Shown one piece after another: positions 1 to 20,058 of a DNA stretch of 63,845 nucleotides (positions are counted from its first letter, which is position 1; the number at the start of each line of letters is the position of its first letter). Under the pieces are notes generated by a model, which made no database searches, was not told the DNA's origin, and was given only the letters and a program-made list of their open reading frames with translations. Both the position numbers and the translations under genes were made by a program. The stretch comes from Ylistrum balloti (lineage: Eukaryota), in assembly GCF_031769215.1 (NCBI RefSeq), contig NW_026782215.1, forward strand, positions 992,001 to 1,055,845. Direction: 5' to 3'.

Positions 1-1
1 T

Positions 2-106
2 CCCTATCAACCTCCGGCAACAGCCCCTCCCGGCTACGTACCTCACATCGGTGACAGGGGACCACTTCTCCCTCCGCCTTACACAGGACCACCACCCAAA
101 TACTGA
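2..106 (+). CDS. 3' end (partial terminal exon) of an unidentified gene with a Pro/Tyr-rich C-terminus carrying three PPxY motifs
   Basis: Frame from nt 2 reads PYQPPATAPPGYVPHIGDRGPLLPPPYTGPPPKY* (TGA 104-106). GC-rich relative to flanks and followed by an AT-rich UTR-like stretch with AATAAA at 550-555. The 5' part lies outside the window. Confidence 0.6.
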   Translation, partial: PYQPPATAPPGYVPHIGDRGPLLPPPYTGPPPKY

Positions 107-297
107 GTTTCAAACATGACGGAAGGAAAATAGAATACCAGTCTGGACATTCGGAAAGTAGTCTCCTGGCACGGACTCCGTGTTTCTGGAGTCAGCTATA
201 GGGCGATCTCAATGCATGTTTCAATCAAAAGTACCATATAACGACGTAACGTTACTAGAGGGCGCATCTCCTAATTACTTGTCTCAATGGTAACTGT

Positions 298-318
298 TAT
301 ATATATATATATATATAT
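298..318. repeat. (TA)10 microsatellite
   Basis: Perfect TA run read directly. Confidence 0.95.
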
Positions 319-1233
319 GGGAAGCAACTCACTTTCCAATGACCTTCAGTAACGGTACAACTGGATTGGACTACCTATTAATATGCTACGTTGGTATATT
401 ACATCGAAATACGAAAACATGCTCTGAATTCAGCATTCTTTGGATCTGATATTCGCCTACTATACGGAGCCAATGCCAGTATCATGGCATCATGCATCAA
501 ACGAAGGCTATACAATGAGTTACAATATATCATCGAGCTTCCATTGTTGAATAAATAAATCTAGCAATCATAATTATTTTCCTAAGTACATTTTACTGCC
601 ATGTTGTCATATTTAAGTGTGAAAGCTTGTCTACAATCACATTACTTATCTTAATTTATTCGTATGTATATTTGATACGTTTCAACATATCATGATAATT
701 TATATTTTATAATCCATCACATACCATTGACCATATGTATATATTTGCATTGTTTACATATTGAACAAACAAACAAAGCATCCGGCTTGAGCATACTATC
801 TTACTTTTTTCAATAACATTTAAGCTTTATATGACATTTGTTTTATGCGGTATATACAACTACTTTAAGTCTATGACCATTAACTCGAGAAATCGTCAAA
901 ACTGAATGGTGTGATCCCAATTTCTTATTGTGTTATTTTCATAGCGAGGACTGATTTAAATGTTAATTTACAGCAGTGTGTTTTGTTGAAGTAAAATTTG
1001 ATATATATGTATGAATACATTGTATGTTCTTATTCCAATTTCATAAGTCCGCACGCGCACAACGTCTTTATTATTGAACACTGAATCGCTACAACCAAAC
1101 CTTGGGAAGTTTTCTAATCGATAGATTGTATTAATGAGAAATTAGGTAGTCTTAATTAAAACTATTAACGGACATAAACAACACAACCGCCACACCAAAA
1201 GACACACAATAGAGCCAAACAATGAATTAAACT

Positions 1234-1283
1234 GCAACATACAACTGTTTCGTCCCTTTTTTCATACTAGTCAGTAATGTTAA
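1234..1283 (-). ncRNA. Degenerate type I hammerhead ribozyme, copy A (probably inactive)
   Basis: Minus strand: ttaacatta-CTGACTA-GTATgaaaaaagGGAC-GAAA-CagttG-TA|tgttgc. G12 and the GTA cleavage triplet are retained, position 8 is T and stem II is damaged. Homologous over ~80-90 nt to copy B (1216-1296 vs 10111-10188, first 21 nt identical). Confidence 0.7.
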
Positions 1284-1444
1284 GAACCTCAATATTAAAA
1301 TATAGGTGTCGACTATGGAAAATTCCAAAATGATCGAAAGTAGATTTTACTTAAAAGAAACATTTTAACAGGAAGTATAAATTAAGTTATTGTGTTCTCA
1401 ATGATGTCATTGAACATTTACGCCTAATGATAAATGAATTGGCT

Positions 1445-1624
1445 TTATTTATTTTACAACAACCACTTTTGTTGGCCCGGATCGAAGAGCGAGGGGTCAG
1501 TACCCGGGTAAAACCCACGTAGTCGGACAGATGATCCCATACCTATTCATGTCCGTTCCAGTAATCGTATCCCGGACGACAAGGTGAAAAGCAAGTGCGA
1601 TGCCACAGCGCCATCCGACCACCC
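1445..1624 (-). mobile_element. tRNA-derived SINE with V-domain-like central motif, copy 1
   Basis: Minus strand starts GGGTGGTCGGATGGCGCTGTGG (A-box-like), has a decayed B-box (GATACGATTAC), then GTGGGTTTTACCCGGGTACT (V-SINE-like motif, recalled) and GGGCCAACAA. Collinear with the copy at 2205-2400. Confidence 0.75.
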
Positions 1625-2204
1625 TTCTGCCTCATCCTTAGCTGCCAATAGAAATGAAAATTGACTATCATATATTTTGATTCATACAAAAAAATTCAAA
1701 TGAAATAATATTTTCTTGATCATGTATATATCTTTACTTTTGTTGACCAGGACTACAAAACTATTCACTCATAGGTTGGGATTTTGGGTCTTTTGAAAAC
1801 AGAAAGTCTTAAATATTTCACACATATCAGCCATATAAATGCACTTGTTAGTTCATGGACTTCGCCAAGTAAAAAGCAATATGATAGAGTAGTATATTGC
1901 ACGAACATTTGTCATGCCACGGCACTTGTATACATTTCTGGACGTTCCCATTCCCAGTATCTTATCTTCTCTCTATCGACATATATCTAATCATTTACTC
2001 CTGAAACTAATTTCCATTATGGCCGTTGTCAACGACGCTCCTGTGTTATTATCTACTTCGTCCGGTACAATGAACTCACAGCTATCACGAAGATAAGTAT
2101 AAAGTACACGTATATACCTTGGCTTTATGACTTATGGAAATACGTGGTTATCAAAAATAGTTATTCGTTATTCTAGGAAGAGAAAGCCCTAAAGTAGATA
2201 ATAA

Positions 2205-2400
2205 AACGTTATATCTCGATTATCATTGAGCAGATTTCTGTCGGGTGCGGCATCTCTTGTTGGCCCAGATGGAAGTGCGCGAAGGGAAGAGACCGGACTA
2301 TCCGGGGAAACCCCCACCTTTTCGCGTTCGTTCCTGCAATCCAACCCCGGACGCCTAGATGAAAGGCGAGTGTGTTACTACTTTCGCCAACCGACCACCC
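2205..2400 (-). mobile_element. tRNA-derived SINE, copy 2 (same family as 1445-1624)
   Basis: Minus strand starts GGGTGGTCGGTTGGCGAAAGTAG, B-box-like GGTTGGATTGC, GGGGGTTTCCCCGGATAGTCCGG and GGGCCAACAAGAG. This explains the spurious ORF 2226..2441. Confidence 0.75.
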
Positions 2401-3948
2401 ACTTAGACACCTTTATGTATATTTATATGTATCTATTGTAGAATAAAACAACCAGCAACGTTTGCTCCTTAGTATAAATGTTTACCATATACATTGGTAT
2501 ACAGTGTAGTCTGAATACCACAACTAACAGTTACCAGGTCCATGGCCATTCCAGGACTGACTCTAGTCAGGTTTGTACAAACAGTTCAACTTACAGTAAT
2601 GACATCAGCAAACACAGTGTGGATGGTCAAGCTAATAAGGTACAGTTTCAGCGACTTCATGAAGTTATCGCATTAACTGTTGACCCAGTGGGTCAGATTC
2701 ACACGGACAAGTGTTTTACCATGGCTTGTCACATTCCCACATCAACATGATAGTATAAGATAGATAAATGCATTATTTCCGACTTGTTTTCTCAGAAGGA
2801 AAGATTCACCAATGTGGACGGACTCGGCCCATCTGATAAGATGTTTGGTGTCGCCAGGACAAAAGACGTATATATTTAACTATACTGCGAGTCCATGCCC
2901 GATGCAACACTCCCGATAGACAACGGTAGGTATCATGCCTGTTTACATCAACGGTACATTACGACCTGATTTTTGATAATTAAAAATGTGAATTCCTTGC
3001 TGTAATAATCCGCAGCCTCATATAGTAACATATTTCAGTCGACATGATGACCATGTATATTGTTCGAATGCAAATTTTGTTGAAAATGGGTAAAAAATGT
3101 TCCGAAGTACTCATTCGATATTACCTGCATTTTGTTCTTTTTGTGGAATATACACCAACATAGAAAAACTTCTATCTGATTTAGTGTCTTATTTGATTTT
3201 TTTCTTCTCTCAACGAAAGGTGGCAATATGTATTTAGATATCAATATTTACCGGATAATGTTTTTTTCTTATCACGAGAACTTATCTAGAGACTTTTTTC
3301 AAGTGAAACACATATTTGGATTATCATTAAACTTTAAAAATGGTCAGTGAAAACAAGGCAATAGAATTCATCATTCACTTTAGAAAAAGAGAGTAAAACT
3401 ACTATTTTTCATCCTTTATAAAAATCTAAATGGTTTGGTTTACAACTAAATTCCGGAATGGAGTTATATCATATTACGCCGTAAAATATGATATAATTAG
3501 ACATAACCAACAGTTTTGTAAAAAGTATAACTTTAGCATTCATTGAAAATTCAGTTCAAACTCCAAATGTATACGAGTTATTCCCCTTCATTGTAGACGT
3601 AATTCTTTTCATATTAAGATAATTTGGATGACTTCTGATTTTAAAAAAAAACGACAGGAATCTACAACTGTTTGTGACTTTGATGTGAAAGCAAGTTTCC
3701 CCTTTATATTTCAATCACTGCACTCCGTTATGTCAAGTGTATATATCTACACAAGGCCGAGGTTTTATATAAATACCAACAACACGTGCAAACGACCGTT
3801 GGTAAACAACGTCTATCAGTAGTTATCAGTAAAGTCAATGCATTATATAAATATGATATCAGATACTGTATGAAGTCTTACTGTACTGATATAAGCACAT
3901 CATCACCACATCGTATGTGGTTCTAGCATTTGTGACCAGACCACGAAC

Positions 3949-6900
3949 ATGAAAGGACCTATACAGATATTGCTCCTCTTTGGGACGGCTGCCCTCCTCC
4001 AGGCAGGATGTCCGACCATCCCACCGATGGCTGACTTTAACACCGAGCGGGTAAGTCACGTGTGCATTAGACTAGAAATAGTGCAAAATCAATGCAAAGA
4101 TGATATCGCGGCATTCAACTAAATTGACAAAAAACACAGGTTCCTTACATCACCGAATTTATCTAAAAACAACTTGCCATTAATTGTTATGATAGAAAGT
4201 CTTTATTCCTTTTGATAAGATGGCAACAGAAAACAGATATATTTAAACTTATTTCTGAACCTATGGCAGTGTTTTGGTCACGTGCACCAGACGTTGGTTA
4301 TATAAGTTCACACGTTGGCCCACAGCGATCACGTACCATGACCACCCTTGTTTTAATATCTCTGTATGAAAGGGTTACGACAGCTTTTTCAGTCGATTGT
4401 TGAGGTATTACTTTATTTCTCTAGCTGTACGTGTAGGCCCCAGTTTTAATTTTTTTTGTATTTCACTCATCCACTGTATCGGCAGTTGAAGTTTTCTTAT
4501 TAGTTATCCAACCCATTGTATCGAACGTTGAAGTTTTTTAAAATATTTATTTCTTTAACACATTGTACCGGTCTTTGAAGTTTGTAGTCATACTTCATTA
4601 GTCCATTTTATGTAACTGCGTTTTGGGAGATGGGGAGGGATTCTCGTCGTTGAATTTGACAATTCCTTAATCATTATCCAGAGTGGTCGTTCATTACACT
4701 CACTAGAGTCAGTACGTATGTAACAACATCAATATTCAGAAGCGTCATTTTTCTGTATCTTATCGACAGTACGCAGGCACGTGGTACGAGACGGAGAGGT
4801 TTGACAATCCATTTGAGTGGTATACAAGATGTGTGTCTGACACGTACATTTCACGAGGAGATGGCAGCTACACTGTCCTCTACAATAGAATAGGCACGTG
4901 GTAAGAATCATTTGGAAATGTAATACTAATATGACGTCATGATTTCAAATTACTATATTGTTTTTGCAGTGTCTCATGTTAGGAGAATGAAACAATATTA
5001 ATTGTATCAATCCTTCATAAGAATCAGAGAATATAGATAACTGTAGAGCCATTTGTTTTATAAACACATTTAGTCGGCCATACTTGTACTTAGTAGAAAT
5101 TTATTTTGATTTTTTTTTTCTGTTTTATACCTTTTGTTTTTGTTTTTGTATTTTTTTTTTATCTCTCTCTCTTTCCTTTTCATTTTATGTCGTTACACAT
5201 ACCCCGAGCTTTAACAACACAAACATCAATTTAAATTATTGGCTTACAATATCTTAAAAAGGGAAAATATAAAATTGATATTACACAATGCACAAGATAT
5301 TGATATAAGATTTGAGACCATTATATTTTTTTTATATCCTTGCCTGGTTTAATCATTGATAGGTAACTTAGCAATGTGCTTTTTAAAGAACACTTAAATT
5401 TTTTTAAACATTCGTGTTAAAATAAACCCCAAAACTGATACCATCATTTGTGTTTGGTACTGCAGGACGGGATCGAACCGAACAACAGAAGGTGCCCTAG
5501 ACATTGTCGACGACACGCACCCTGGGTATTTCATAGCCTCATTTTCGGGATGTAAGTAACTGTTGTTTGGTGTCATATCACAAAAACAAATTGAAGGGTA
5601 CATAATTAATCAATCCTAGAAAACGAATAATCCGGGTAACCATTTTCGTTACACCGGGAAATGGAGAATTCGGCTTATGTATAATAAAATATATCCATAA
5701 TAAAGCGATACACGCGCCTTTAACGTCAAATTTGTTGTTTTTGTACATATTTTCGGCGTCGGAACATTGTTTATTTGGACTATTTTACACGCGAAGTTCA
5801 ATCTATGCAAGTAATGTCACGTTCTCAAATGAGAACAAGGTTGATCAAGATTTACATGGCGGGTGTCGTCGATGAAGCAGAAGACGCTTACTTTGAACCA
5901 CAAGGCAAAATAACGAGCATCAAACACGTCAAGCTTCATATCGCACACAAAACAAAAATAGAATATTTATTAATGAAATCACTATGATCGCTGTAAAACT
6001 TCTCCATACTTTTAATTTACCTGAATCTGCTGAAACCCTGTGTTACGAGTTTGTTAAGTTATAGTCCATATATAAATTTAAGAACATCAGTTTGTATGTT
6101 AAAACAATATGCTCTATGTTTAAATACTACATTACTCATTTAATTGGTAACTTCGACTTGCTTAAGTGGAAAGAATTAATAAAGCTTTAGTATATATTCC
6201 ATATGAGAGAATGTGGTAATATTGAATGACCTAAACACAAACCTGTCATGATGTCAGAAAAATAACACTGAGGTTTATTGTATATCAGGGATTCCATCAG
6301 GTGACTACTACATCATTGATACCGACTATGATGACTATTCCATTGTGTACTCGTGCTCCGACATGTTTGGAATCACACAAATCGGTAAGTATACTATTAT
6401 CTTAATTAATTTCAATTACCACAGCTTCTCGATTCAATTTTCAACGTTAAAAATAGACGTTTAAGATTATTTTGAAATTTTTTAAATATTTATTATTTAT
6501 TTTTATTTTATTTATTAATCATTATTATGAGTCATTATGAGATACGTTTCTCTGGTTGCATACACACATTTACACTTGGTATGAAGCCAAACAGTAGTTT
6601 AAATAAATTTCAGATCTGGGCTGATACAACATACTTTTATTTTCCGGGATCAAAAACGGTTTGCATGCAGTCTTGTCAATAAAGTTATTATAAAATGGCA
6701 ATCAGCAACTCACTATAAATGATACATTCACGGGTGTTATAATTGACAGAAAAATCGTTCCAAATTTTCTACGGTGTAACTTTATTGAAAGGTTTGGTCA
6801 AGTTTCGAATTCTATCAAAAGCTATGTCCTTATTTAAGCATCTCATTATGATCGCTATATATGTGGTTAGTGAGTTGGTGGGAGATTCGTAGATCTGAAG

Positions 6901-7413
6901 TTGACTTTAAAGTGCTAGCACACTGAAGTATACTTCCGATTACATCCCGCAGGACACCTCACAATACATTAAAAGATAGTTCCCTATACTGTTAGGGAAG
7001 ACATTAGGAATGTACTTCCAAGACTTTACAGAACGCCCACGTGATCTGAATTAGACTAGGAACCCGCATTGTATCGCTGCCCATCACCAGGGTTTGTGAC
7101 TTTAAGTGAAACTTGCCTTACAATAAGCCGTTCAGTTTAAGTAAAATTTGTCGACTCCGGCGTATTCATCTAAAGGTGTATCAAAATAAAAGTGTTAATT
7201 TGCTACTGATTACCTTTTCTTTGTTGATAGATCGTAAGGAAAAATCTTAATGACATGATGCTTTTCACTGTTCCAGAACTTGCATGGATTATGTCCCGTG
7301 AGAGAAAAAGTTTAACAGGTCGCGAGAGGTCTGGTTTGTACAGGAAGCTAAGAAGGCTTGGGATTGATACTTCTCAATTCATCGTGTCCGATCAGACCGG
7401 ATGTGACGCATAA
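3949..7413 (+). CDS. APOD: Apolipoprotein D-like secreted lipocalin, 183 aa, 5 coding exons
   Basis: Exons 3949-4050, 4770-4900, 5466-5551, 6289-6384, 7277-7413 (552 nt, all GT-AG, phases 0,2,1,1). Signal peptide MKGPIQILLLFGTAALLQA, then CPTIPPMADFNTERYAGTWYE (lipocalin GxW), IIDTDYDDYSIVYSC (TDY), AWIMSR and C-terminal DQTGC. The four Cys are in the ApoD pattern. The symbol denotes family likeness, not proven orthology. Confidence 0.92.
5841..5889 (+). repeat. Dispersed repeat fragment, 42/49 identical to 48289-48337 (reverse complement)
   Basis: ttgatcaagatttacatggcgggtgtcgtcgatgaagcagaagacgctt vs ttgacctagatgtacaaggcaggtgtcgttgatgaagcagaagatgctt. It explains the shared AGVVDEAEDA peptide in ORFs 5775..5987 and 48017..48328. 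It resembles terminal sequence of bivalve Penelope-like repeats (recalled, unverified). Confidence 0.8.
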
Positions 7414-7490
7414 AACTAGCATGGCCAACATCACTTCCATTCTAATATCGCAAACCGGTGTGTTTGTCAGGAACAAAACGTACATACAAC

Positions 7491-7496
7491 AATAAA
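7491..7496 (+). terminator. Probable polyadenylation signal of the ApoD-like gene
   Basis: AATAAA 78 nt after the stop codon, followed by U/GU-rich sequence. Confidence 0.55.
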
Positions 7497-8440
7497 TATA
7501 AGATAAAGCTCCAAATATGTTATTTTTTCGTCTTGTGATTTTATGTTCATTGTACGCGGTGTTTGCTTTGTTCCAATTATTTTACAACTTCAGTCTCCTT
7601 TCATTCTGTGTATGAAACAAAACAGCATCGTCTTATTTAAGACAAAATGCCGAACTGCACATAATATTTGTAATCCTGAATTTGAGTCAATATAAAACAC
7701 ATTTACATGTACAAAATTTCTAGCTCTGTACCAAAGAATCACACTTTACATAGATCAACAATGAAGCTGTAAGACATTTGACTAGATCTGTGTCGGAAAA
7801 CGGGTCTACTCATTTATTTGAGGGGGAAAACTTCAGAAACCTTTATTTCGAAATGAAACATACCAAATACAACTATAACCACGTGTCTTGGTCGATAATG
7901 TTTCAACCCACAACGGTTTTGTGAAGAAATGTACACGAAAAAAGATAAGTATAAGACATTAAACCCGTATGAAAATATTTCAGGACGTAATGAAAGGCGA
8001 ATACTTTTGGTACTGGGTTGGACTATTGGGCGGAACGAGGCGGAATGGCTTAGTAAAGTGCTTCGTTCTCATGTTCTCACACCCTCCTCCTTTGTCATCC
8101 AGATAAGCCATCTTGGTGGCTTTAATGACAACACATCACTAGACGTTTCGAACTGTATGGCCTGGTGTTGCTAATCCTGACGTAATATATACATGTACCA
8201 TTGACAATTTCATGTCATAGACGAACTCCCTTGAATCTGTGCAAATGTCTCCAATAGCGATAACCAGTCAATTGCCGATTTCTGAAGTTGTTTGAGCATG
8301 CGTGAAATTTGAAATATTTCTGGGTTAATGAGTGTCGTCTGCATAGAAAGGCAGTTGAAATTTTAAAAAGGTACGAACATGTACATTTTAACCCCTTGAA
8401 GGGCCGTCTTATCCTTTACTTGTGATTTGCAACCTGTGAC

Positions 8441-9267: not shown

Positions 9268-12200
9268 TCATGTTTCTGTATGTGACTTTTTTTTCTGAAA
9301 CCGTTTGATAAGGATATCATCACTACGGAAAAGGGAATCTTGTCTCTCTAAAGGAATGTCTTCGACATCAAATGCTTCCAACATCAGCTGAAACAAAACA
9401 TTTAAAAATTTTACGATTAAATATGTAGATATGACAACATTTGACACAGAAAGATTGATAACTTGTTATAGTAAACTTATTGGTGACTTGTCAAATTTAT
9501 TACAATGGGTCTTTGAATTATGGCAAGTAATTCCTACAGCAATATACAGACAAGACAAGGACTTGGCTTTGTAAGTGGTAAATTTACTATATCAGAAAGA
9601 GCAAGATGTGTTTATGAAACACTCTGCCCATGGTAACGACAATATTCTGAAGTGGGATATCATATAACTATACTGTGTAAGGCATTTGCTAATTGCATTC
9701 AAACTTTGTCAAAAAACTTTTATCTTCTAACAATGTAATGAACCTGAGAACCTACCTCTAAGAACTTGCGCTCCAGTTCGGGTTTATTCCCTGTGGTTCT
9801 CTGCTCATAACAACATAACACAACTGTTTTGTCTGAACAGAGAGAACAGACAGTTTCCACTAATGGACCAAGAGACTGCAAAAATAAGTATAGATACACA
9901 TTCTTTACAGAGTTTGACCAAAAAAAAATTGAAAACATCAAAATAATGCAATGAAATTGTTATCATGGTGAAAAAATGTTTTTGACTACATGGATCAAAT
10001 AGGTTAGTTATAAGTACCAGTAGGTACTGTATCTATTTGGCAGATTGTACAAAAAACACACAAGTGAATAGCTCCTTTTAATACATAGTTAAGAGTTAGA
10101 TACAGTCAAGCAAACAATGAATTAAACTGCATCATACAGTTGTTTTGTCCTTCTAGGACTTGTCAGTGATGCTAAGGGCCTAAATGTTGAAGCCTAGGAA
10201 ACCATTAAGGAGAGATCAAAAGAAAAGTCAAATCTAAACAGGAAAGTGTACAAGCCCCAAAACTAATTTTCTTGTTTTACAATTTTCATATATCAGTTGA
10301 TTTTAGAACAATGTCAAGTACCTGTGAATGTTCTAAAGTGTGCTATTATTCAAGTGAATTAATATTAACAACAAACCAATGTCAACCACACAAAATACCC
10401 TACAATCACTTCCCAACAAGATAAACTCAATCTTATCATGAGAATCCTACTTTTTCATAGTAGATACAGTCTGCCATGAGAACATAGTCAACAGTCCGTT
10501 CCAGTGACTCTTCTCCCCACTGTAAGGACTGGGCTACAGCAGTCCCTGTTATGTGATGTTTGTTGGTGTTGATGTTCAGATTCATCAGTGGCAGGAACTC
10601 TGGTAAATCTGTGACAGTTACATCAGCTCTATGAAGATAAAATGTTACAGTGAATTTACTACATTAGAAGCAATAGATATAGTGGGGTTGACGAATGATC
10701 CCTGACACAAATTTATTACAGGTTATTCCGTGAAATTTGTATTTGGTCTTATTTATGACCCTACTGTTAAGACATGTTACAATGGAGAGTTCGTAAGTTG
10801 TGAGGGAGTTCAAAGATTTTAGACTTTGGAACAGTTTTTAAAAAATGTACTTTTTTGGTACTATAAAAATAATAATAATAAACATAAAGATGTGGTAAAG
10901 GATTCTCAACATCCAAATACAGTTTTGTTGTTTATTCTGGATAAGATTACTTAGAGATGTTTCCATTGCTATGTGGCCATCACAGCTGAGATATCTAGTG
11001 AACACCACATGGCATTTTACCTGGAATATTATTAATTTTTTAGACTTATGGAGTAATGGTTCTTACGGTATATTATATAACTATAGCACATTAAGATCTT
11101 GTTCTATCTTGTTTCAATCTAGGCATCAATTTAAGATACAGTTATGGCCTGGAGACAAATCTTAACAAAAGACAACTCTGCAATTAGGAAGTTACATGCC
11201 CTTTCTTTGGTTTAATGCATATAATTTTAGTATGAGCAATGTATACAACACCATTCATTATTCTAGTTTCCATATGTTAACAAAGTTATGCTTGAAACAC
11301 AAAATTATAATAAGGGCAATAACCCTAAATAAGGGGTTGTGGGCCTTGAATCCAGTACAATGGACATGAAATTTGAGTAACTAATGTACACACCAACTTT
11401 TATGATTCTTGCTTAACTGTGGACAAGAAAAGGACAGACAAATGGGCAGAAAGGCAACTATATGCTCTCCAGAAAATTTCTGTGGAGTATGAAAATGTAA
11501 AGATAAACACTGTAACAGCTCATTACATATCCATTTATTTGAGCCTGGACAAGGTTGACAAACAGTAAACTACTGTTAGTGTATTGGTAATTAAGATGTT
11601 AAGGCACTGTCAACCTTAACTCGAGTCCATGCTGTCGTCATTGAGTCCTTGGGAAAGACACTTCAGACTAATTGTTTTATATTTTATTCAACATGTCCCC
11701 TGTACTATCAGACCAAATTATTTTGACGTTCTATTGACTTTTTATATCAGTCTGGAGCCGATGAACTCCTGACCCATATTAAAAAGTGGATAAAACATCC
11801 TAATAATTCAGACTTCTGTACTAGATGCTATTTAGTGAGGTAACTGGCACCAGCTACAACAAAGAAGCCTGTATCAAAATGACTTTGTCTGTTCCTGGGA
11901 CGAGAAACACAGAACACAAGTAAAAATAAACTAACTATAACAGACATTGGATTTTCCGGATCTGTACGGCCACATTTTGACTTGACATTTACAATCCATT
12001 TTCAGTTTATTTCACACGCGTTACTAGTTTGCAATCGACGAAGTCACAGTCAGCCGAGTTGTGTTAAAAAGGAACAAATGGTTAACGTAGATATCTATTT
12101 CAAGTATTTATTTACCCGTAAACTGCAGCGTACACACCAAGTACACCTGTGCCGGCTCCCACATCCACAACATCTAATCCGCGCCATGAATTTCCACCGT

Positions 12201-12354
12201 CGAAGTCGGCAGTTTCGAGGTATTTACACAGCACTAGCGCCGCATCCCAAACTACACAACCAACATCACCCACTTCTAACTGATGTATTTTAAGGATTTG
12301 GCCATTTTTCATTTCTAATTCACGAATGAATGTGTTTTCTATGGGCGCAGACAT
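9268..12354 (-). CDS. VCPKMT: VCP lysine methyltransferase (METTL21D), 218 aa, 4 exons
   Basis: Exons (minus) 12354-12116, 10628-10451, 9875-9756, 9387-9268 (657 nt, GT-AG). Motifs GDVGCVVWDAALVLCKYL, VVDVGAGTG (SAM motif I), VTDL, LQWGE, VLMADCIYYE, CYEQRTTGNKPELERKF and FRSDDI are characteristic of METTL21D. Confidence 0.96.
10122..10176 (-). ncRNA. Degenerate type I hammerhead ribozyme, copy B, sense within VCPKMT intron 2
   Basis: Minus strand: cttaGCATCA-CTGACAA-GTCC-tagaa-GGAC-AAAA-CaactG-TA|TGATGC-agtttaa. Stem I is perfect (GCATCA/TGATGC, 6 bp), stem II is perfect (GTCC/GGAC), and there is a 1-bp stem III and a GTA triplet (cleavage would be between 10135 and 10134). Core positions 8 and 12 are A instead of G. 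Confidence 0.8.
11280..11495 (+). mobile_element. Non-autonomous repeat of the pearl/CvA (Helentron-associated, HINE-like) type, 3' portion
   Basis: Ends with a decayed GACA microsatellite (ggacagacaaatgggcagaaag), then caactatatg, a stem-loop ctccagaaaatttctgtggag and tatgaaaa. This is the recalled 3' architecture of such bivalve elements. The left boundary is approximate. Confidence 0.5.
11640..11666 (+). mobile_element. CORE-like SINE fragment
   Basis: attgagtccttgggaaagacacttcag, homologous to 8441-8470 and 30085-30113. Confidence 0.6.
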
Positions 12355-15600: not shown

Positions 15601-17143
15601 TAGACTGCATATTTGCATCAGTGTGTAGATGAATTCTGAAAATAAGGTCCAGCAACACAGAATAAGTATTAGATTGAAGCCAAACCATACTTGTCTGTCA
15701 CAAGAATTTATTCTTAGTACATGTTTAGAAGCATACCTCTTTTCCATTGCAGCTTGATAGTGACTCAGAGGAGCAAGATGGTGACTTGAAAAGGTTGAGG
15801 TTTATGTGTGTAGTAACACTCGACATTCCTGTACATGGTTTAAGTACAGCTGGTCTCGGGGCTTGGGAAGAGGCTTGTCTCACTACAGGTGATCTCATTA
15901 TGTAGGATGGTCCCTCCCTGTGCCATTTCATAACAACATGGAGTACTACATGTACAAGATAATCTTTAACCATGCCAAATACATTGTTTTACCTGAAGGA
16001 AAACAAAAAAAGGAAATGAAGAAACAATTATTGTCCTATGCACAATTTCATGTCTACTAAGTTTGAAAAGAAATCGGTGAAAAAAATGAGGGGATCTACA
16101 GACAAAAACCTTCAGTCAAAATGATTAAAAAGCAATAACCCTTCCAAAAACTGAGAGTGCCTCTGGGTAAAATAGTGCTTTAAATTTTGCTGATAAAGCA
16201 CAGCAAGTTATAAAGAGGTTAGTGAACAACTGACAGAACAAGTCTGCAGGAAGATTAAAGTACTGAAGAGAAACAAATGGCAAGAAATAATGATAAAAAA
16301 CTTTTGTAAAATAATGTTACCAGAGTTACCTCCCTTCCACATTTTAACCGTCTGTCATATGTATCTTCAGATCCCACAAGCAGGGCCAAGGCAGTCTGTA
16401 AGGCTAAGAAACTATCCTACCAGAGAGCTGTGGAAGATGCTTTCTCCAGGGTCCTTCTTATTGTTCTGAACAATGGCAAAGTTTCTGTAGAGATAGATAC
16501 CACTAGACCAGATGCCTTGCTGGCCCAAAAACAAGCCAATGCAGAATCTGTTTTAAAGGTATAGTAAAATTACATGTATTTGTAGGATGAAAAATAATGC
16601 ACACAGTTTTAAATCCACAATCTATAATCCATGATTACTTTTCATTGTAATCACTTCACCAATAATGTAGACCCAAATCCCAGGACACCCATAACCATTC
16701 ATACAACCGTATACACATTCCTTCACATCTGTCCATCAAAATAAGGCATTGGAACTAACTGCCAGCTAGAAGTTGATATGTTTCAATGTAACCTTGTATT
16801 TTCTTTTCACTGACAAGATTTATTTGTCTAAGAAGAAATCCAAACATGGAAGTAACTGTGACACACATTTTTCTGTTCGCATATTTAGTTGAAAGTGTGA
16901 GAGTGACTGAATTTAAGTTATAAAACCTTCTCCAATGCTGACTTAAAAGCCAAAAGCATTTGGTGTTGATATCTTATATTATGCTTTGCTAAACCTTAAT
17001 TTGTAATGGACATATTAATTATCATACAGGTTAATGAATTAGACGAGGAACCAAAGGAAGAACAAGACAATATATCTTTTGATATGGACAATATTGATGA
17101 CATCAACCTTCATATTCTTCATCAGTTGGAAGACGAGATGTAA
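12613..17143 (+). CDS. RDM1: RAD52 motif-containing protein 1, 315 aa, 6 exons
   Basis: Exons 12613-12717, 13563-13850, 14865-14981, 15753-15888, 16371-16558, 17030-17143 (948 nt, GT-AG, phases consistent). RRM (LYITGIP; FTVFGPVYGIRL; GYYAFVTFY), Rad52-like RD motif KCQELANHYIGFNGWS, then AVEDAFSRVLLIVLNNGKV and an acidic tail. Confidence 0.93.
14188..14537 (-). mobile_element. HINE/MITE-like repeat in RDM1 intron 2
   Basis: Ends in tcttgtt (AACAAGA on the minus strand, the terminus shared by the elements at 21224, 24845 and 61308). The opposite end is ttagtccc...ggggc followed by a decayed GTCT tract. Boundaries are approximate. Confidence 0.4.
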
Positions 17144-17535
17144 ATCAGGTCAAGGCATTCTTGAATCAGCTTTTGTCATGGAGTTATGGAGAAAGAACTA
17201 CAACCATTCTTTAAAATAAGATGTGAACCAAAGGTGACTTTAAATAAGTCATTGTCAACAACCAGCATGATTTCCTTGATTTCACTGAAATTCCTCCACA
17301 GTGAAAGAGTTGAAGTCACTTGATTGATTACAACCAATGCCAATATCATGCAAGTTATTTATGTCCAATGAAGATCAAAATTACTTATCAAGTCTGCAAA
17401 TACAAATTATGATGGGGCACCTCAACTCAACTGTTCATTGTTATCTATTTTTTGTTAAATTTTCATTAATCATTTGAAAATGTTATCAATGGCTTTACAT
17501 TTGTAAATTTTCAATACCTTTGTATTTAATATTTC

Positions 17536-17541
17536 AATAAA
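17536..17541 (+). terminator. Probable polyadenylation signal of RDM1
   Basis: AATAAA followed by GU-rich tgtttgtgg. It lies 46 nt before the minisatellite. Confidence 0.55.
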
Positions 17542-17586
17542 TATTTTGCATTTTCATGTTTGTGGAGTTGACGATTTATCATACTG

Positions 17587-19594
17587 CATCCACATGTAGT
17601 TCTTGTCACCTACAGTGTACATCCACATGTAGTTCTTGTCACCTATAGTGTACATCCACATGTAGTTCTTGTCACCTATAGTGTACATCCACATATAGTT
17701 CTTGTCACCTAGTGTACATCCACATGTAGTTCTTGTCACCTATAGCGTATATCCACATGTAGTTCTTGTCACCTATAGTGTACATCCACATGTAGTTCTT
17801 GTCACCTATAGTGTACATCCACATGTAGTTCTTGTCACCTATAGTGTACATCCACACATAGTTCTTGTCACCTAGTGTACATCCACATGTAGTTCTTGTC
17901 ACCTATAGTGTACATCCACATGTAGTTCTTGTCATCTAGTGTACATCCACATGTAGTTCTTATCACCTTTAGTGTACATCCACATGCAGTTCTTGTCACC
18001 CAAAAGTGTACATCCACATGTAGTTTTTGTCATCTATAGTGTACATCCACATGTAGTTCTTGTCACCTTTAGTGTACATCCACATGTAGTGTACATCCAC
18101 ATGTAGTTCTTGTCATCTAGTGTACATCCACATGTAGTTCTTGTCACCTTTAGTGTACATCCACATGTAGTTCTTGTCACCTATAGTGTACATCCACACA
18201 TAGATCTTGTCACCTTTAGTGTACATCCACATGTAGTTCTTGTCATCTAGTGTACATCCACATGTAGTTCTTGTCACCTAAAGTGTACATCCACATGTAG
18301 TTCTTTTGTCATCTATAGTGTACATCCACATGCAGTTCTTGTCACCTATAGTGTACATCTACACATAGTTCTTGTCACCTAGTGTGAATCCACATGTAGT
18401 TCTTGTCACCTTTAGTGTACATCCACATGTAGTTCTTGTCACCTATAGTGTACATCCACATGTAGTTCTTGTTGCCTATAGTGTACATCCACATGTAGTT
18501 CTTGTCATCTAGTGTACATCCACATGTAGTTCTTGTCACCTAGTGTGCATCCACATGTAGTTCTTGTCATCTAGTGTACATCCACATGTAGTTCTTGTCA
18601 CCTAAAGTGTACATCCACACATAGATCTTGTCACCTAGTGTACATTCACATGTAGTTCTTGTCATCTAGTGTACATCCACATGTAGTTCTTGTCACCTAA
18701 AGTGTACATCCACATGTAGTTCTTGTCATCTAGTGTACATCCACATGTAGTTCTTGTCACCTAGTGTACATCCACATGTAGTTCTTGTCATCTAGTGTAC
18801 ATCCACATGTAGTTCTTGTCACCTAAAGTGTACATCCACATGCAGTTCTTGTCACCTTTAGTGTACATCCACACATAGATCTTGTCACCTAGTGTACATC
18901 GACATGTAGTTCTTGTCATCTAGTGTACATCCACATGTAGTTCTTGTCATCTAGTGTACATCCACATGTAGTTCTTATCATCTAGTGTGCATCCATATGT
19001 AGTTCTTGTCATCTAGTTTGCATCCACATGTAGTTCTTGTCACCTATAGTGTACATCTACACATAGTTCTTGTCACCTAGTGTGAATCCACATGTAGTTC
19101 TTGTCACCTATGGTGTACATCCACATGTAGTTCTTGTCACCTAGTGTACATCCACATGTAGTTCTTGTCACCTATAGTTTACATCCACATGTAGTTCTTA
19201 TTTCCTATAGTTTCCATCCACATGTAGTTCTTGTCACCTAGTGTGCATCCACATGTAGTTCTTGTCACCTAGTGTGCATCCACATGTAGTTCTTGTCACC
19301 TATAGTGTACATCCACACATAGTTCTTGTCACCTAGTGTGCATCCACATGTAGTTCTTGTCACCTATAGTGTACATCCACATTTAGTTCTTGTCATCTAG
19401 TGTACTTCCACATGTAGTTCTTGTCATCTAGTGTACATCCACATGTAGTTCTTGTCATCTAGTGTACATCCATATGTAGTTCTTGTCATCTAGTGTGCAT
19501 CCACATGTAGTTCTTGTCACCTATAGTGTACATCCACATGTAGTTCTTGTCATCTAGTGTACATCCACACATAGTTCTTGTCACCTATAATGTA
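17587..19594. repeat. Minisatellite, ~60-63 head-to-tail units of 33 bp (CATCCACATGTAGTTCTTGTCACCTATAGTGTA) and 31 bp (...TCA[C/T]CTAGTGTA)
   Basis: Directly visible. The repeated GDKNYMWMYTI ORFs (11 aa = 33 nt) are its by-product. There are no unique spacers. Confidence 0.98.
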
Positions 19595-20058
19595 TGAGTC
19601 GCATCCACAACCATTTGTAGTTCTTGTGACCTGAAAGGGGTACAGAAACTGATCACTGGACACAGCTTTCATCCATCAGCTTTTCTTTTAACAACTTCTT
19701 CTGAAGAACCAGTTAGTGAAGGATTATGATATTTGGCAAAGTAAAGTTCTAGTCAGGAGTAATATTTTGCCAAAAGGTTTCTTGGATGAAGCCAGATTCA
19801 TCTTTGATCAAAAAGCATTTTGTCAAAAAAATAGCTTTGAGCAATATTCAGTATTAAAGGAATAAAATTTATGAAGAAAACAAAATTACTTCTGAATGAA
19901 CAAGACATATCATGATACTATATAACAGGTTCATTTCACAAGCAACAAATTTCCTGATTTGGTGTCACAATTAAAATAATAGATTTCAGTTGTGTTATGA
20001 TTTGTATAATGTAAGTCATTCTCAAATGAAATTTTGGTTATTTTTGGTTATTAGATAA

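What the first reader, a model, noticed from the sequence alone, without database searches (positions are those of the whole stretch)
10111..10188. Sense-oriented hammerhead ribozyme inside VCPKMT intron 2 with exactly the two catalytic guanines knocked out
Seen (minus strand, same as VCPKMT): GCATCA-CTGACAA-GTCC-TAGAA-GGAC-AAAA-CAACTG-TA|TGATGC, with a distal TTA/TAA stem and a 3' bulge. Stems I and II are perfect, yet core positions 8 and 12 are both A. Established: G8 and G12 carry out acid-base catalysis in hammerheads. Both lie in CpG dinucleotides of the ancestral core (CTGACGA, GGACGAAA), so both changes are CpG-to-CpA transitions. Inference: either gene-body methylation decay, or selection against a ribozyme that would cut the pre-mRNA at 10135/10134. 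A CpG-encoded core would make such ribozymes self-disarming in methylated gene bodies.
Basis: partly seen in the sequence, partly recalled or inferred. Interest (0 to 1): 0.78.

Follow-up and report, generated by a model that had tools for sequence, protein, structure and literature searches.

The report
Decayed hammerhead ribozyme in gene intron
This is an old, worn-out copy of a very common ribozyme-carrying mobile element sitting in an intron; it lost its two catalytic guanines, and all its other CpG sites, through ordinary methylation-driven mutation, so it is ordinary.

Summary
On the minus strand at 10172-10129 lies a type-I hammerhead with perfect helices I and II, A at core positions 8 (10161) and 12 (10146), and a would-be cut site at 10135/10134. 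It lies sense in the 575-nt intron between coding exons 2 and 3 of a VCPKMT/METTL21D-like gene.

It is not a stand-alone ribozyme. It is one copy (about 10385-10042) of a roughly 390-400-bp dispersed, 5'-truncated, retrozyme-like repeat. The hammerhead motif occurs about 16,000 times in this 648-Mb bivalve-like genome.

The knock-out is not specific to the ribozyme:
- The copy has lost all 8 consensus CpGs, and the intron has no CpG at all.
- Across 49 copies, the hammerhead CpGs decay at the same rate as the element's other CpGs.
- Their loss tracks CpG-poor flanks (p=3e-5).
- A8 and A12 co-occur genome-wide at the rate expected if independent (50 observed, 52.5 expected).

Neutral methylation decay explains the finding. 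Selection against intronic cleavage is unnecessary but was not tested directly. Earlier notes of this scan had already described this repeat family and its 45-bp arrays on other DNA.

The parts
10129..10172 (-). Hammerhead type-I relic (44 nt). Helix I is 10172-10167 paired with 10134-10129. The core box CTGACAA is 10166-10160. Helix II is 10159-10156 paired with 10150-10147, with loop 2 at 10155-10151. AAAA is 10146-10143. The helix III and loop 3 stretch CAACTG, followed by U16.1, is 10142-10136. A17 is 10135.
   Evidence: Sequence read; homologous to copies that hit Rfam RF00163 at 34.1 bits. The window copy itself gives no hammerhead hit, even at E<=10.
10161..10161 (-). Core position 8: A here, G in the family consensus (CpG to CpA).
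10146..10146 (-). Core position 12: A here, G in the family consensus (CpG to CpA).
10140..10140 (-). Loop-3 G to A change. It breaks the palindrome ACAGCTGT that would build the extended helix III of a dimeric ribozyme.
   Evidence: The dimer model is described in PMC4209133.
10042..10385 (-). One copy of the roughly 390-400-bp retrozyme-like dispersed repeat. The 3' end is fixed at 10042 (...TGTACAATC). The alignment is clear up to about 10385 and weak up to about 10435. Non-CpG divergence from the consensus is 13.3%, and 0 of 8 consensus CpGs are kept.
9876..10450 (-). Intron between coding exons 2 and 3 of the VCPKMT-like gene (575 nt, no CpG). Most of it is the repeat copy.
   Evidence: Donor GT at 10450-10449 after ...YYEK; acceptor ...tgcag at 9880-9876; CpG count 0.
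10451..10628 (-). Coding exon 2 of the VCPKMT/METTL21D-like gene (the acceptor position is approximate).
   Evidence: PF10294 positions 69-134, E=1.5e-12; PDB 4lg1 METTL21D residues 85-145, E=4e-15.
12115..12354 (-). Coding exon 1 with the start ATG (the donor position is approximate).
   Evidence: ORF; PF10294 positions 3-66; PDB 4lg1 residues 9-84, E=1e-17.
9756..9875 (-). Coding exon 3 (SLGPLVETV...KFLE).
1206..1340 (-). A second, partial and decayed copy of the same repeat. It has T at core position 8, a broken helix II and G12 kept. It lies in the CpG-normal part of the window.

Best explanation
A roughly 390-400-bp non-autonomous, hammerhead-bearing retroelement (retrozyme-like, probably Penelope-like-element dependent) inserted long ago, in sense orientation, into a short intron of the VCPKMT-like gene. 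That gene body has been CpG-methylated in the germ line. Spontaneous deamination of 5-methylcytosine then removed every CpG of the copy. The ribozyme's only two CpGs are C7-G8 and C11.1-G12. Deamination on the opposite strand turned both guanines into A. These are the general-acid-bearing and general-base residues, so the relic cannot self-cleave. No selection is required, and the relic is most likely inert intron filler. Shown here: the homology, the ancestral CpG state, the total CpG loss, the CpG-poor gene body, and the family-wide link between CpG-poor flanks and loss of G8/G12. Inferred: actual methylation, the timing, and the loss of activity.
For: Intact copies reach the Rfam RF00163 gathering score (34.1 versus 34 bits). 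The motif is found 16,260 times with a reversed-pattern control of 0. The window copy has 13.3% non-CpG divergence and keeps 0 of 8 CpGs; seven are the transition products CA, TG or TA (read TG at the site scored GG), and the 5'-most site reads AA in a poorly aligned stretch. Intron 2 has 0 CpG, the gene's CpG o/e is 0.40, and window 1-8000 has 0.93-1.02. CpG retention in copies correlates with flank CpG o/e (rho=0.50, p=0.005) and not with age (rho=-0.19, p=0.33). Hammerhead CpGs are kept 3/21 in flanks with o/e<0.5 and 47/71 in flanks with o/e>=0.5, p=3e-5. Hammerhead CpGs are kept as often as the other CpGs: 19% versus 12% (p=0.70) and 65% versus 61% (p=0.65). The A8+A12 state is seen in 4/10 copies in CpG-poor flanks and 2/35 elsewhere, p=0.016. 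Genome-wide exact 25-mers number 6,163, with A8 in 566, A12 in 572 and both in 50 against 52.5 expected. The roles of G12 as general base and of the G8 2'-OH as general acid are from PMC6155905. Mosaic gene-body methylation in a bivalve is from PMC4378273.
Against: Methylation itself was not measured; CpG depletion is only a proxy. The copy sample is small (49), and 29 of the copies were picked by similarity to the window copy, which biases them toward its alleles; the unbiased subset alone (20 fetched, 18 with the ribozyme) is not significant (p=0.09). The non-CpG part of the ribozyme is unusually well kept in this copy (1 change in 40 positions against 13% element-wide, P=0.02). However, the same gradient holds family-wide (7.8% versus 11-16%), and 13 of 44 copies have one change or none.
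Confidence: 0.85

Rival explanations
1. Selection disarmed the ribozyme. An active sense-strand hammerhead would cut the VCPKMT pre-mRNA inside intron 2 and impair splicing, so alleles with A8 or A12 were favoured and fixed.
For: The copy is sense-oriented in a short intron. Both catalytic residues are hit while helices I and II stay perfect. Non-LTR retrozymes are reported as depleted from introns relative to intergenic DNA in Xenopus (bioRxiv 10.64898/2026.07.22.740005). A mussel retrozyme hammerhead cleaves co-transcriptionally at about 0.1 per min (PMC7229834).
Against: All six non-ribozyme CpGs of the copy are lost too. Hammerhead CpGs decay no faster than the other CpGs in either flank class. 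A8 and A12 co-occur at the rate expected if independent. The double loss is seen in 4 of 10 copies in CpG-poor DNA. The ancestral helix III is 2 bp with a palindromic loop, a design reported to cleave poorly as a monomer (PMC4209133), and there is no partner copy in the same transcript: the only other copy found in the window lies at 1206-1340, beyond the end of the CDS at 9268. The monomer's lowest-energy fold pairs C3-U4-G5 with loop 3, which is an inactive fold. The insertion reached fixation while presumably still intact.
Confidence: 0.06
2. The copy was born dead. A8 and/or A12 were already present in the source element that was copied into the intron, so nothing was disarmed in place.
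For: The exact CA/CA 25-mer occurs 50 times, and A8-only or A12-only variants fill whole 45-bp arrays, so inactive variants do get propagated at the DNA level. Some CpG variants look shared among the similarity-picked copies, for example TG at consensus site 126 in 9 of 24.
Against: Every CpG of the copy is gone and the surrounding intron has none, which points to decay in place. Loss of G8/G12 depends on the flank CpG o/e of each insertion site, which an inherited state would not. The family consensus and 64% of exact 25-mers are CG/CG.
Confidence: 0.07
3. It is a domesticated, non-cleaving RNA element: the hammerhead fold is kept for a role in splicing or regulation of VCPKMT.
For: Only 1 of the 40 non-CpG ribozyme positions has changed in this copy.
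Against: The same low divergence of the ribozyme segment is seen family-wide. The fold is not thermodynamically favoured in context (z=-0.25). No Rfam intronic-hammerhead family is hit. The rest of the element decays at the neutral-looking 7-17%.
Confidence: 0.02

Closest known systems
Type-I hammerhead ribozymes of metazoan non-LTR retrozymes (e.g. the Mytilus galloprovincialis 350-390-bp repeats; PMC7229834)
   Same: It is a bivalve-type genome. The unit of about 390-400 bp carries one type-I hammerhead with 6-bp helix I, 4-bp helix II and a short helix III with a palindromic loop. There are thousands of copies, and head-to-tail junctions occur.
   Different: Here most sampled copies are dispersed, 5'-truncated monomers with a fixed 3' end rather than long unit-length tandems. 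The ribozyme alone is often expanded into 45-bp arrays. CircRNA expression is untested. The window copy is catalytically dead.
Minimal hammerheads in the pseudo-LTRs of Penelope-like elements (PMC4209133; bioRxiv 10.64898/2026.07.22.740005)
   Same: The hammerhead has a short palindromic helix III and is expected to act as a dimer. The copy structure of 5' truncations and partial tandems is typical of PLE-type integration.
   Different: No PLE ORF was linked to this repeat here (not tested). The core here is a canonical Rfam Hammerhead_1 core rather than the relaxed minimal variant.
Conserved intronic hammerheads of amniotes (HH9/HH10 in RECK, CTCL, DTNB; reviewed in PMC6155905)
   Same: It is a type-I hammerhead lying sense in an intron of a protein-coding gene, thought to derive from retroelement ribozymes.
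   Different: Those have intact cores and are conserved across species. This one has lost G8 and G12, shows neutral-type decay, and gives no Rfam hit.
Schistosome Sm-alpha and newt satellite-2 hammerheads
   Same: They are repeat-borne type-I hammerheads with a weak helix III that are reported to work as dimers (Forster et al. 1988, as cited in PMC4209133).
   Different: They come from different host lineages and repeat units. There is no evidence here of transcription or cleavage.

Membership tests
Hammerhead ribozyme, type I (Rfam RF00163) | Three helices around the core in type-I order (open helix I, closed helices II and III) | tested here: met
   The sequence shows helix I at 6 bp, helix II at 4 bp, and helix III as A15.1-U16.1 plus C15.2-G16.2. 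The layout is the same as the Rfam alignment of intact copies.
Hammerhead ribozyme, type I (Rfam RF00163) | Conserved catalytic core C3 U4 G5 A6 N7 G8 A9 / G12 A13 A14 / A15.1-U16.1 H17 | tested here: not met
   The window copy has A8 (10161) and A12 (10146), with all other core positions kept. The family consensus and 3,918 exact 25-mer genomic copies have the full core.
Hammerhead ribozyme, type I (Rfam RF00163) | Covariance-model score at or above the gathering threshold (34 bits) | tested here: not met
   The window copy gives no hit at gathering nor at E<=10 on 501 nt. Sister copies L011, L019 and L027 score 34.1 bits.
Hammerhead ribozyme, type I (Rfam RF00163) | Site-specific self-cleavage after H17 | not testable with these tools
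   This needs in vitro transcription. Loss of activity is expected because G12 is the general base and the G8 2'-OH the general acid (PMC6155905).
Metazoan non-LTR retrozyme / PLE-derived non-autonomous element | Short non-coding unit (about 170-400 bp) carrying one type-I hammerhead | tested here: met
   The unit is about 390-400 bp from head (AAGATAGCAGG...) to tail (...TGTACAATC). The largest blocks shared between copies are about 385-440 bp.
Metazoan non-LTR retrozyme / PLE-derived non-autonomous element | Head-to-tail tandem organisation of units | tested here: inconclusive
   Tail-to-head junctions occur in L009, L011 and L024, but most sampled copies are single and 5'-truncated. The window copy is a single copy.
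Metazoan non-LTR retrozyme / PLE-derived non-autonomous element | Expression as self-cleaved, circularised RNA | not testable with these tools
   No transcript data were available.
Metazoan non-LTR retrozyme / PLE-derived non-autonomous element | Sequence relationship to the pseudo-LTR of an autonomous Penelope-like element in the same genome | not tested
Domesticated intronic hammerhead (HH9/HH10 type) | Intact core kept under purifying selection at an orthologous intronic site | tested here: not met
   The core is mutated, the copy shows family-typical decay, and no RF02275 or RF02277 hit was found. Orthologues were not examined.

The most novel reading that the evidence does not exclude
The two catalytic guanines of this hammerhead family sit in its only two CpGs. 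G12 always follows the conserved C11.1, and G8 follows C7 in this family and in the Rfam consensus. Hammerhead-bearing retroelements that land in germ-line-methylated gene bodies would therefore be inactivated systematically faster, and at predictable positions, than copies in unmethylated DNA. This would be a built-in mutational fuse that lets hosts with mosaic methylation tolerate sense-intronic ribozymes. The small sample here fits this (3/21 versus 47/71 catalytic CpGs kept, p=3e-5). I found no paper making this point.
Probability: 0.6. Interest if true: 0.35.

Novelty: new member of a known kind. Interest (0 to 1): 0.15.

Why it matters
On its own it matters little: it is one dead copy among thousands of a retrozyme-like repeat. 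Two modest points have some value. First, this genome holds a very large family of canonical type-I hammerheads, with about 16,000 motif matches and 3,918 copies with a perfect 25-nt core. That makes it a good system for studying animal retrozymes. Second, the data give a clean small-scale demonstration that the catalytic G8 and G12 of such ribozymes are CpG-encoded, and are lost in step with local CpG depletion at the same rate as neutral CpGs. This should be taken into account before reading 'catalytic-site knock-outs' in genomic ribozyme copies as evidence of selection.

Tried and rejected
- The Rfam scan of the whole window at gathering thresholds, and of 9900-10400 at E<=10, gave no hammerhead hit for this copy. 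The sub-threshold snoRNA-like hits are noise.
- A loose core descriptor (CTGANRA...RAAA) matches the window at chance level (11 hits versus 9.6 expected), so descriptor matching alone proves nothing. Homology to the repeat family carries the case.
- Minimum-energy folding of the region is not special (z=-0.25) and does not give the hammerhead fold in context.
- An apparent excess of CpA over TpG at the two ribozyme CpGs (23 versus 7) was rejected as ascertainment. Those copies were picked by similarity to the window copy, and in the unbiased set the count is 7 versus 3.
- The well-kept non-CpG part of the ribozyme (1 change in 40) was considered as a sign of constraint and rejected, because the same pattern holds family-wide.
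- A literature search for hammerhead plus CpG, methylation and intron found nothing relevant.
- The VCPKMT exons were searched one by one by reference. The joined protein was not built or searched.
- The window is not human: it is a 648-Mb genome with mosaic CpG depletion and about 16,000 hammerhead repeats, and earlier scan notes call it a scallop or bivalve.

Full report
**What is there.**
- The minus strand of the window at 10172..10129 reads GCATCA CTGACAA GTCC TAGAA GGAC AAAA CAACTG TA TGATGC.
- In hammerhead numbering, helix I is 6 bp (10172-10167 with 10134-10129) and helix II is 4 bp. Helix III is A15.1-U16.1 plus C15.2-G16.2, capped by a 4-nt loop. H17 is A at 10135.
- Rfam gives no hammerhead hit for this copy at gathering thresholds, nor at E<=10 on a 501-nt slice.
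- The local minimum-energy fold is unremarkable (z=-0.25).

**It is a repeat copy, and the family carries a real hammerhead.**
- A 251-nt query around the motif finds at least 3,653 first-look candidates in the window's own 648.5-Mb assembly. The 40 that were scored have E-values down to 1e-46.
- The copies share a fixed 3' end (window 10042...TGTACAATC) and have variable 5' ends.
- The longest copies show a tail fragment joined directly to the head of the next unit. This defines a unit of about 390-400 bp.
- The consensus of 29 other copies through the motif is GCATCA CTGACGA GTCC TAGAA GGAC GAAAC AGCT GTA TGATGC.
- Three copies with this exact sequence reach the Rfam Hammerhead_1 gathering score (34.1 versus 34 bits).
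- A 34-mer of the ribozyme, with N at the two CpGs and up to 2 mismatches, occurs 16,260 times in the genome against 0 for the reversed control. Many of these lie in 45-bp tandem arrays.
- The exact 25-nt core with free CpG positions occurs 6,163 times, of which 3,918 are fully intact.
- This layout closely matches the 350-390-bp mussel retrozyme repeats (PMC7229834) and the PLE-derived view of animal retrozymes (bioRxiv 10.64898/2026.07.22.740005). The shared features are unit size, the type-I hammerhead, the 2-bp helix III with palindromic loop ACAGCUGU, 5' truncation and partial tandems.
- Earlier notes of this scan on other pieces of the same genome reached the same description.

**Gene context.**
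- Pfam Methyltransf_16 matches two minus-strand exons at window 12306-12121 and 10633-10451.
- Searched separately by reference, these exons best match human METTL21D/VCPKMT among solved structures. Exon 1 aligns to residues 9-84 and exon 2 to residues 85-145 of 4lg1, far better than to METTL21A, B or C.
- I did not build or search the joined protein.
- Exon 2 ends at 10451 (...YYEK, with the GT donor at 10450-10449).
- Exon 3 starts at 9875, after ...tgcag.
- The ribozyme relic therefore lies in sense orientation in the 575-nt intron between coding exons 2 and 3, and the repeat copy makes up most of that intron. Whether an untranslated exon lies upstream was not examined.

**Why the two guanines are gone.**
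- The consensus element has eight CpGs. The ribozyme contains exactly two of them, C7-G8 and C11.1-G12.
- The window copy keeps none of the eight. Seven are the transition products CA, TG or TA (the automated call scored one of these sites as GG, but read it as TG), and the 5'-most site reads AA in a poorly aligned stretch. Its non-CpG divergence from the consensus is 13.3%.
- The intron has no CpG at all.
- The VCPKMT gene has a CpG o/e of 0.40, whereas window 1-8000 has 0.93-1.02. This is the mosaic pattern expected of germ-line gene-body methylation in bivalves (PMC4378273).
- The second, partial copy in the window (1340..1206, in the CpG-normal part) still has its G12 CpG.

**Family-wide test.**
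- I used 29 copies picked by similarity to the window copy, plus 20 loci (18 with the ribozyme) picked only by a CpG-free 17-mer in the tail.
- CpG retention correlates with flank CpG o/e (rho=0.50, p=0.005) and not with copy age.
- The two ribozyme CpGs are kept 3/21 times where flank o/e is below 0.5 and 47/71 times elsewhere (p=3e-5).
- They are kept as often as the element's other CpGs in both classes: 19% versus 12%, and 65% versus 61%.
- A8 together with A12 is seen in 4 of 10 copies in CpG-poor flanks, against 2 of 35 elsewhere (p=0.016).
- Among the 6,163 exact cores genome-wide, A8 occurs 566 times, A12 572 times and both 50 times. Independence predicts 52.5.
- The perfect stems are not special. 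The ribozyme segment is the least divergent part of the element family-wide (7.8% versus 11-16%), and 13 of 44 copies have at most one non-CpG change in it.

**Mechanism and rivals.**
- The best explanation is neutral CpG decay in a methylated gene body. G12 is the general base and the 2'-OH of G8 the proposed general acid (PMC6155905). The relic is therefore expected to be inactive, and a third change at 10140 also spoils the palindromic loop needed for a dimeric helix III.
- Selection against pre-mRNA cleavage is not needed, for four reasons.
  - The ribozyme CpGs behave like neutral CpGs.
  - The two losses are statistically independent.
  - Hammerheads of this design are reported to cleave poorly as single copies (PMC4209133). 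The intact monomer's lowest-energy fold pairs C3-U4-G5 with loop 3.
  - No partner copy lies in the same transcript.
- Selection is not excluded, because the orientation-by-context comparison could not be run without an annotation.
- A 'born dead' origin is a minor rival. Inactive variants do spread within arrays, but the site-dependence of CpG loss argues for decay in place.

**Limits.**
- Methylation is inferred from CpG depletion only.
- The copy sample is small and partly biased toward the window's alleles.
- Cleavage, transcription, and the element's autonomous partner are untested.

**Verdict.**
- The object is an ordinary decayed member of a known kind of element.

Noticed in passing
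L070:2575-4305 and L061:2580-2952 (genome C30 and C7): Arrays of 45-bp units, each one whole hammerhead with no spacer (about 38 and about 8 copies). Each array lies right next to the repeat's 3' tail at about 2501-2540 of the locus, so the ribozyme segment has expanded inside the element. Whole arrays can be fixed for A8, A12, C8 or T11.1 variants. Earlier notes of this scan already describe such arrays.
   Followed up: partly
window 1206-1340 (-): A second, partial copy of the same repeat with a more broken ribozyme: CTGACTA, helix II disrupted, GACGAAAC kept. It lies in the CpG-normal part of the window, downstream of the VCPKMT-like gene.
   Followed up: partly
window 1-63845: A sharp mosaic of CpG o/e: 0.93-1.02 at 1-8000, 0.08 at 16001-20000, and 0.18-0.65 elsewhere, with a matching TpG+CpA excess. 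This is a textbook footprint of mosaic germ-line methylation.
   Followed up: no
L011:1577-1620 (-) and other intact copies: The intact 44-nt monomer's minimum-energy fold (-13.6 kcal/mol, z=-3.35) extends helix I by pairing core C3-U4-G5 with CAG of loop 3. This is an inactive fold, consistent with a ribozyme that needs a second copy to form helix III.
   Followed up: no
genome C49:954856-955004 and C55:974702-975156: The CpG-free tail 17-mer GCTATTCACTTGTGTGT recurs at spacings of 33 bp, and of 44 bp and its multiples. The element's tail has therefore also been expanded into short arrays in places.
   Followed up: no
L070:1-1662: An unrelated 31-bp satellite (53 copies, 88% matches) lies 0.9 kb from a hammerhead array.
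   Followed up: no
window 11226-11416 and L002:1755-1945: Another repeated sequence (71% identity over 195 bp) inside intron 1 of the VCPKMT-like gene. In L002 it abuts a copy of the hammerhead repeat. Its nature was not examined.
   Followed up: no
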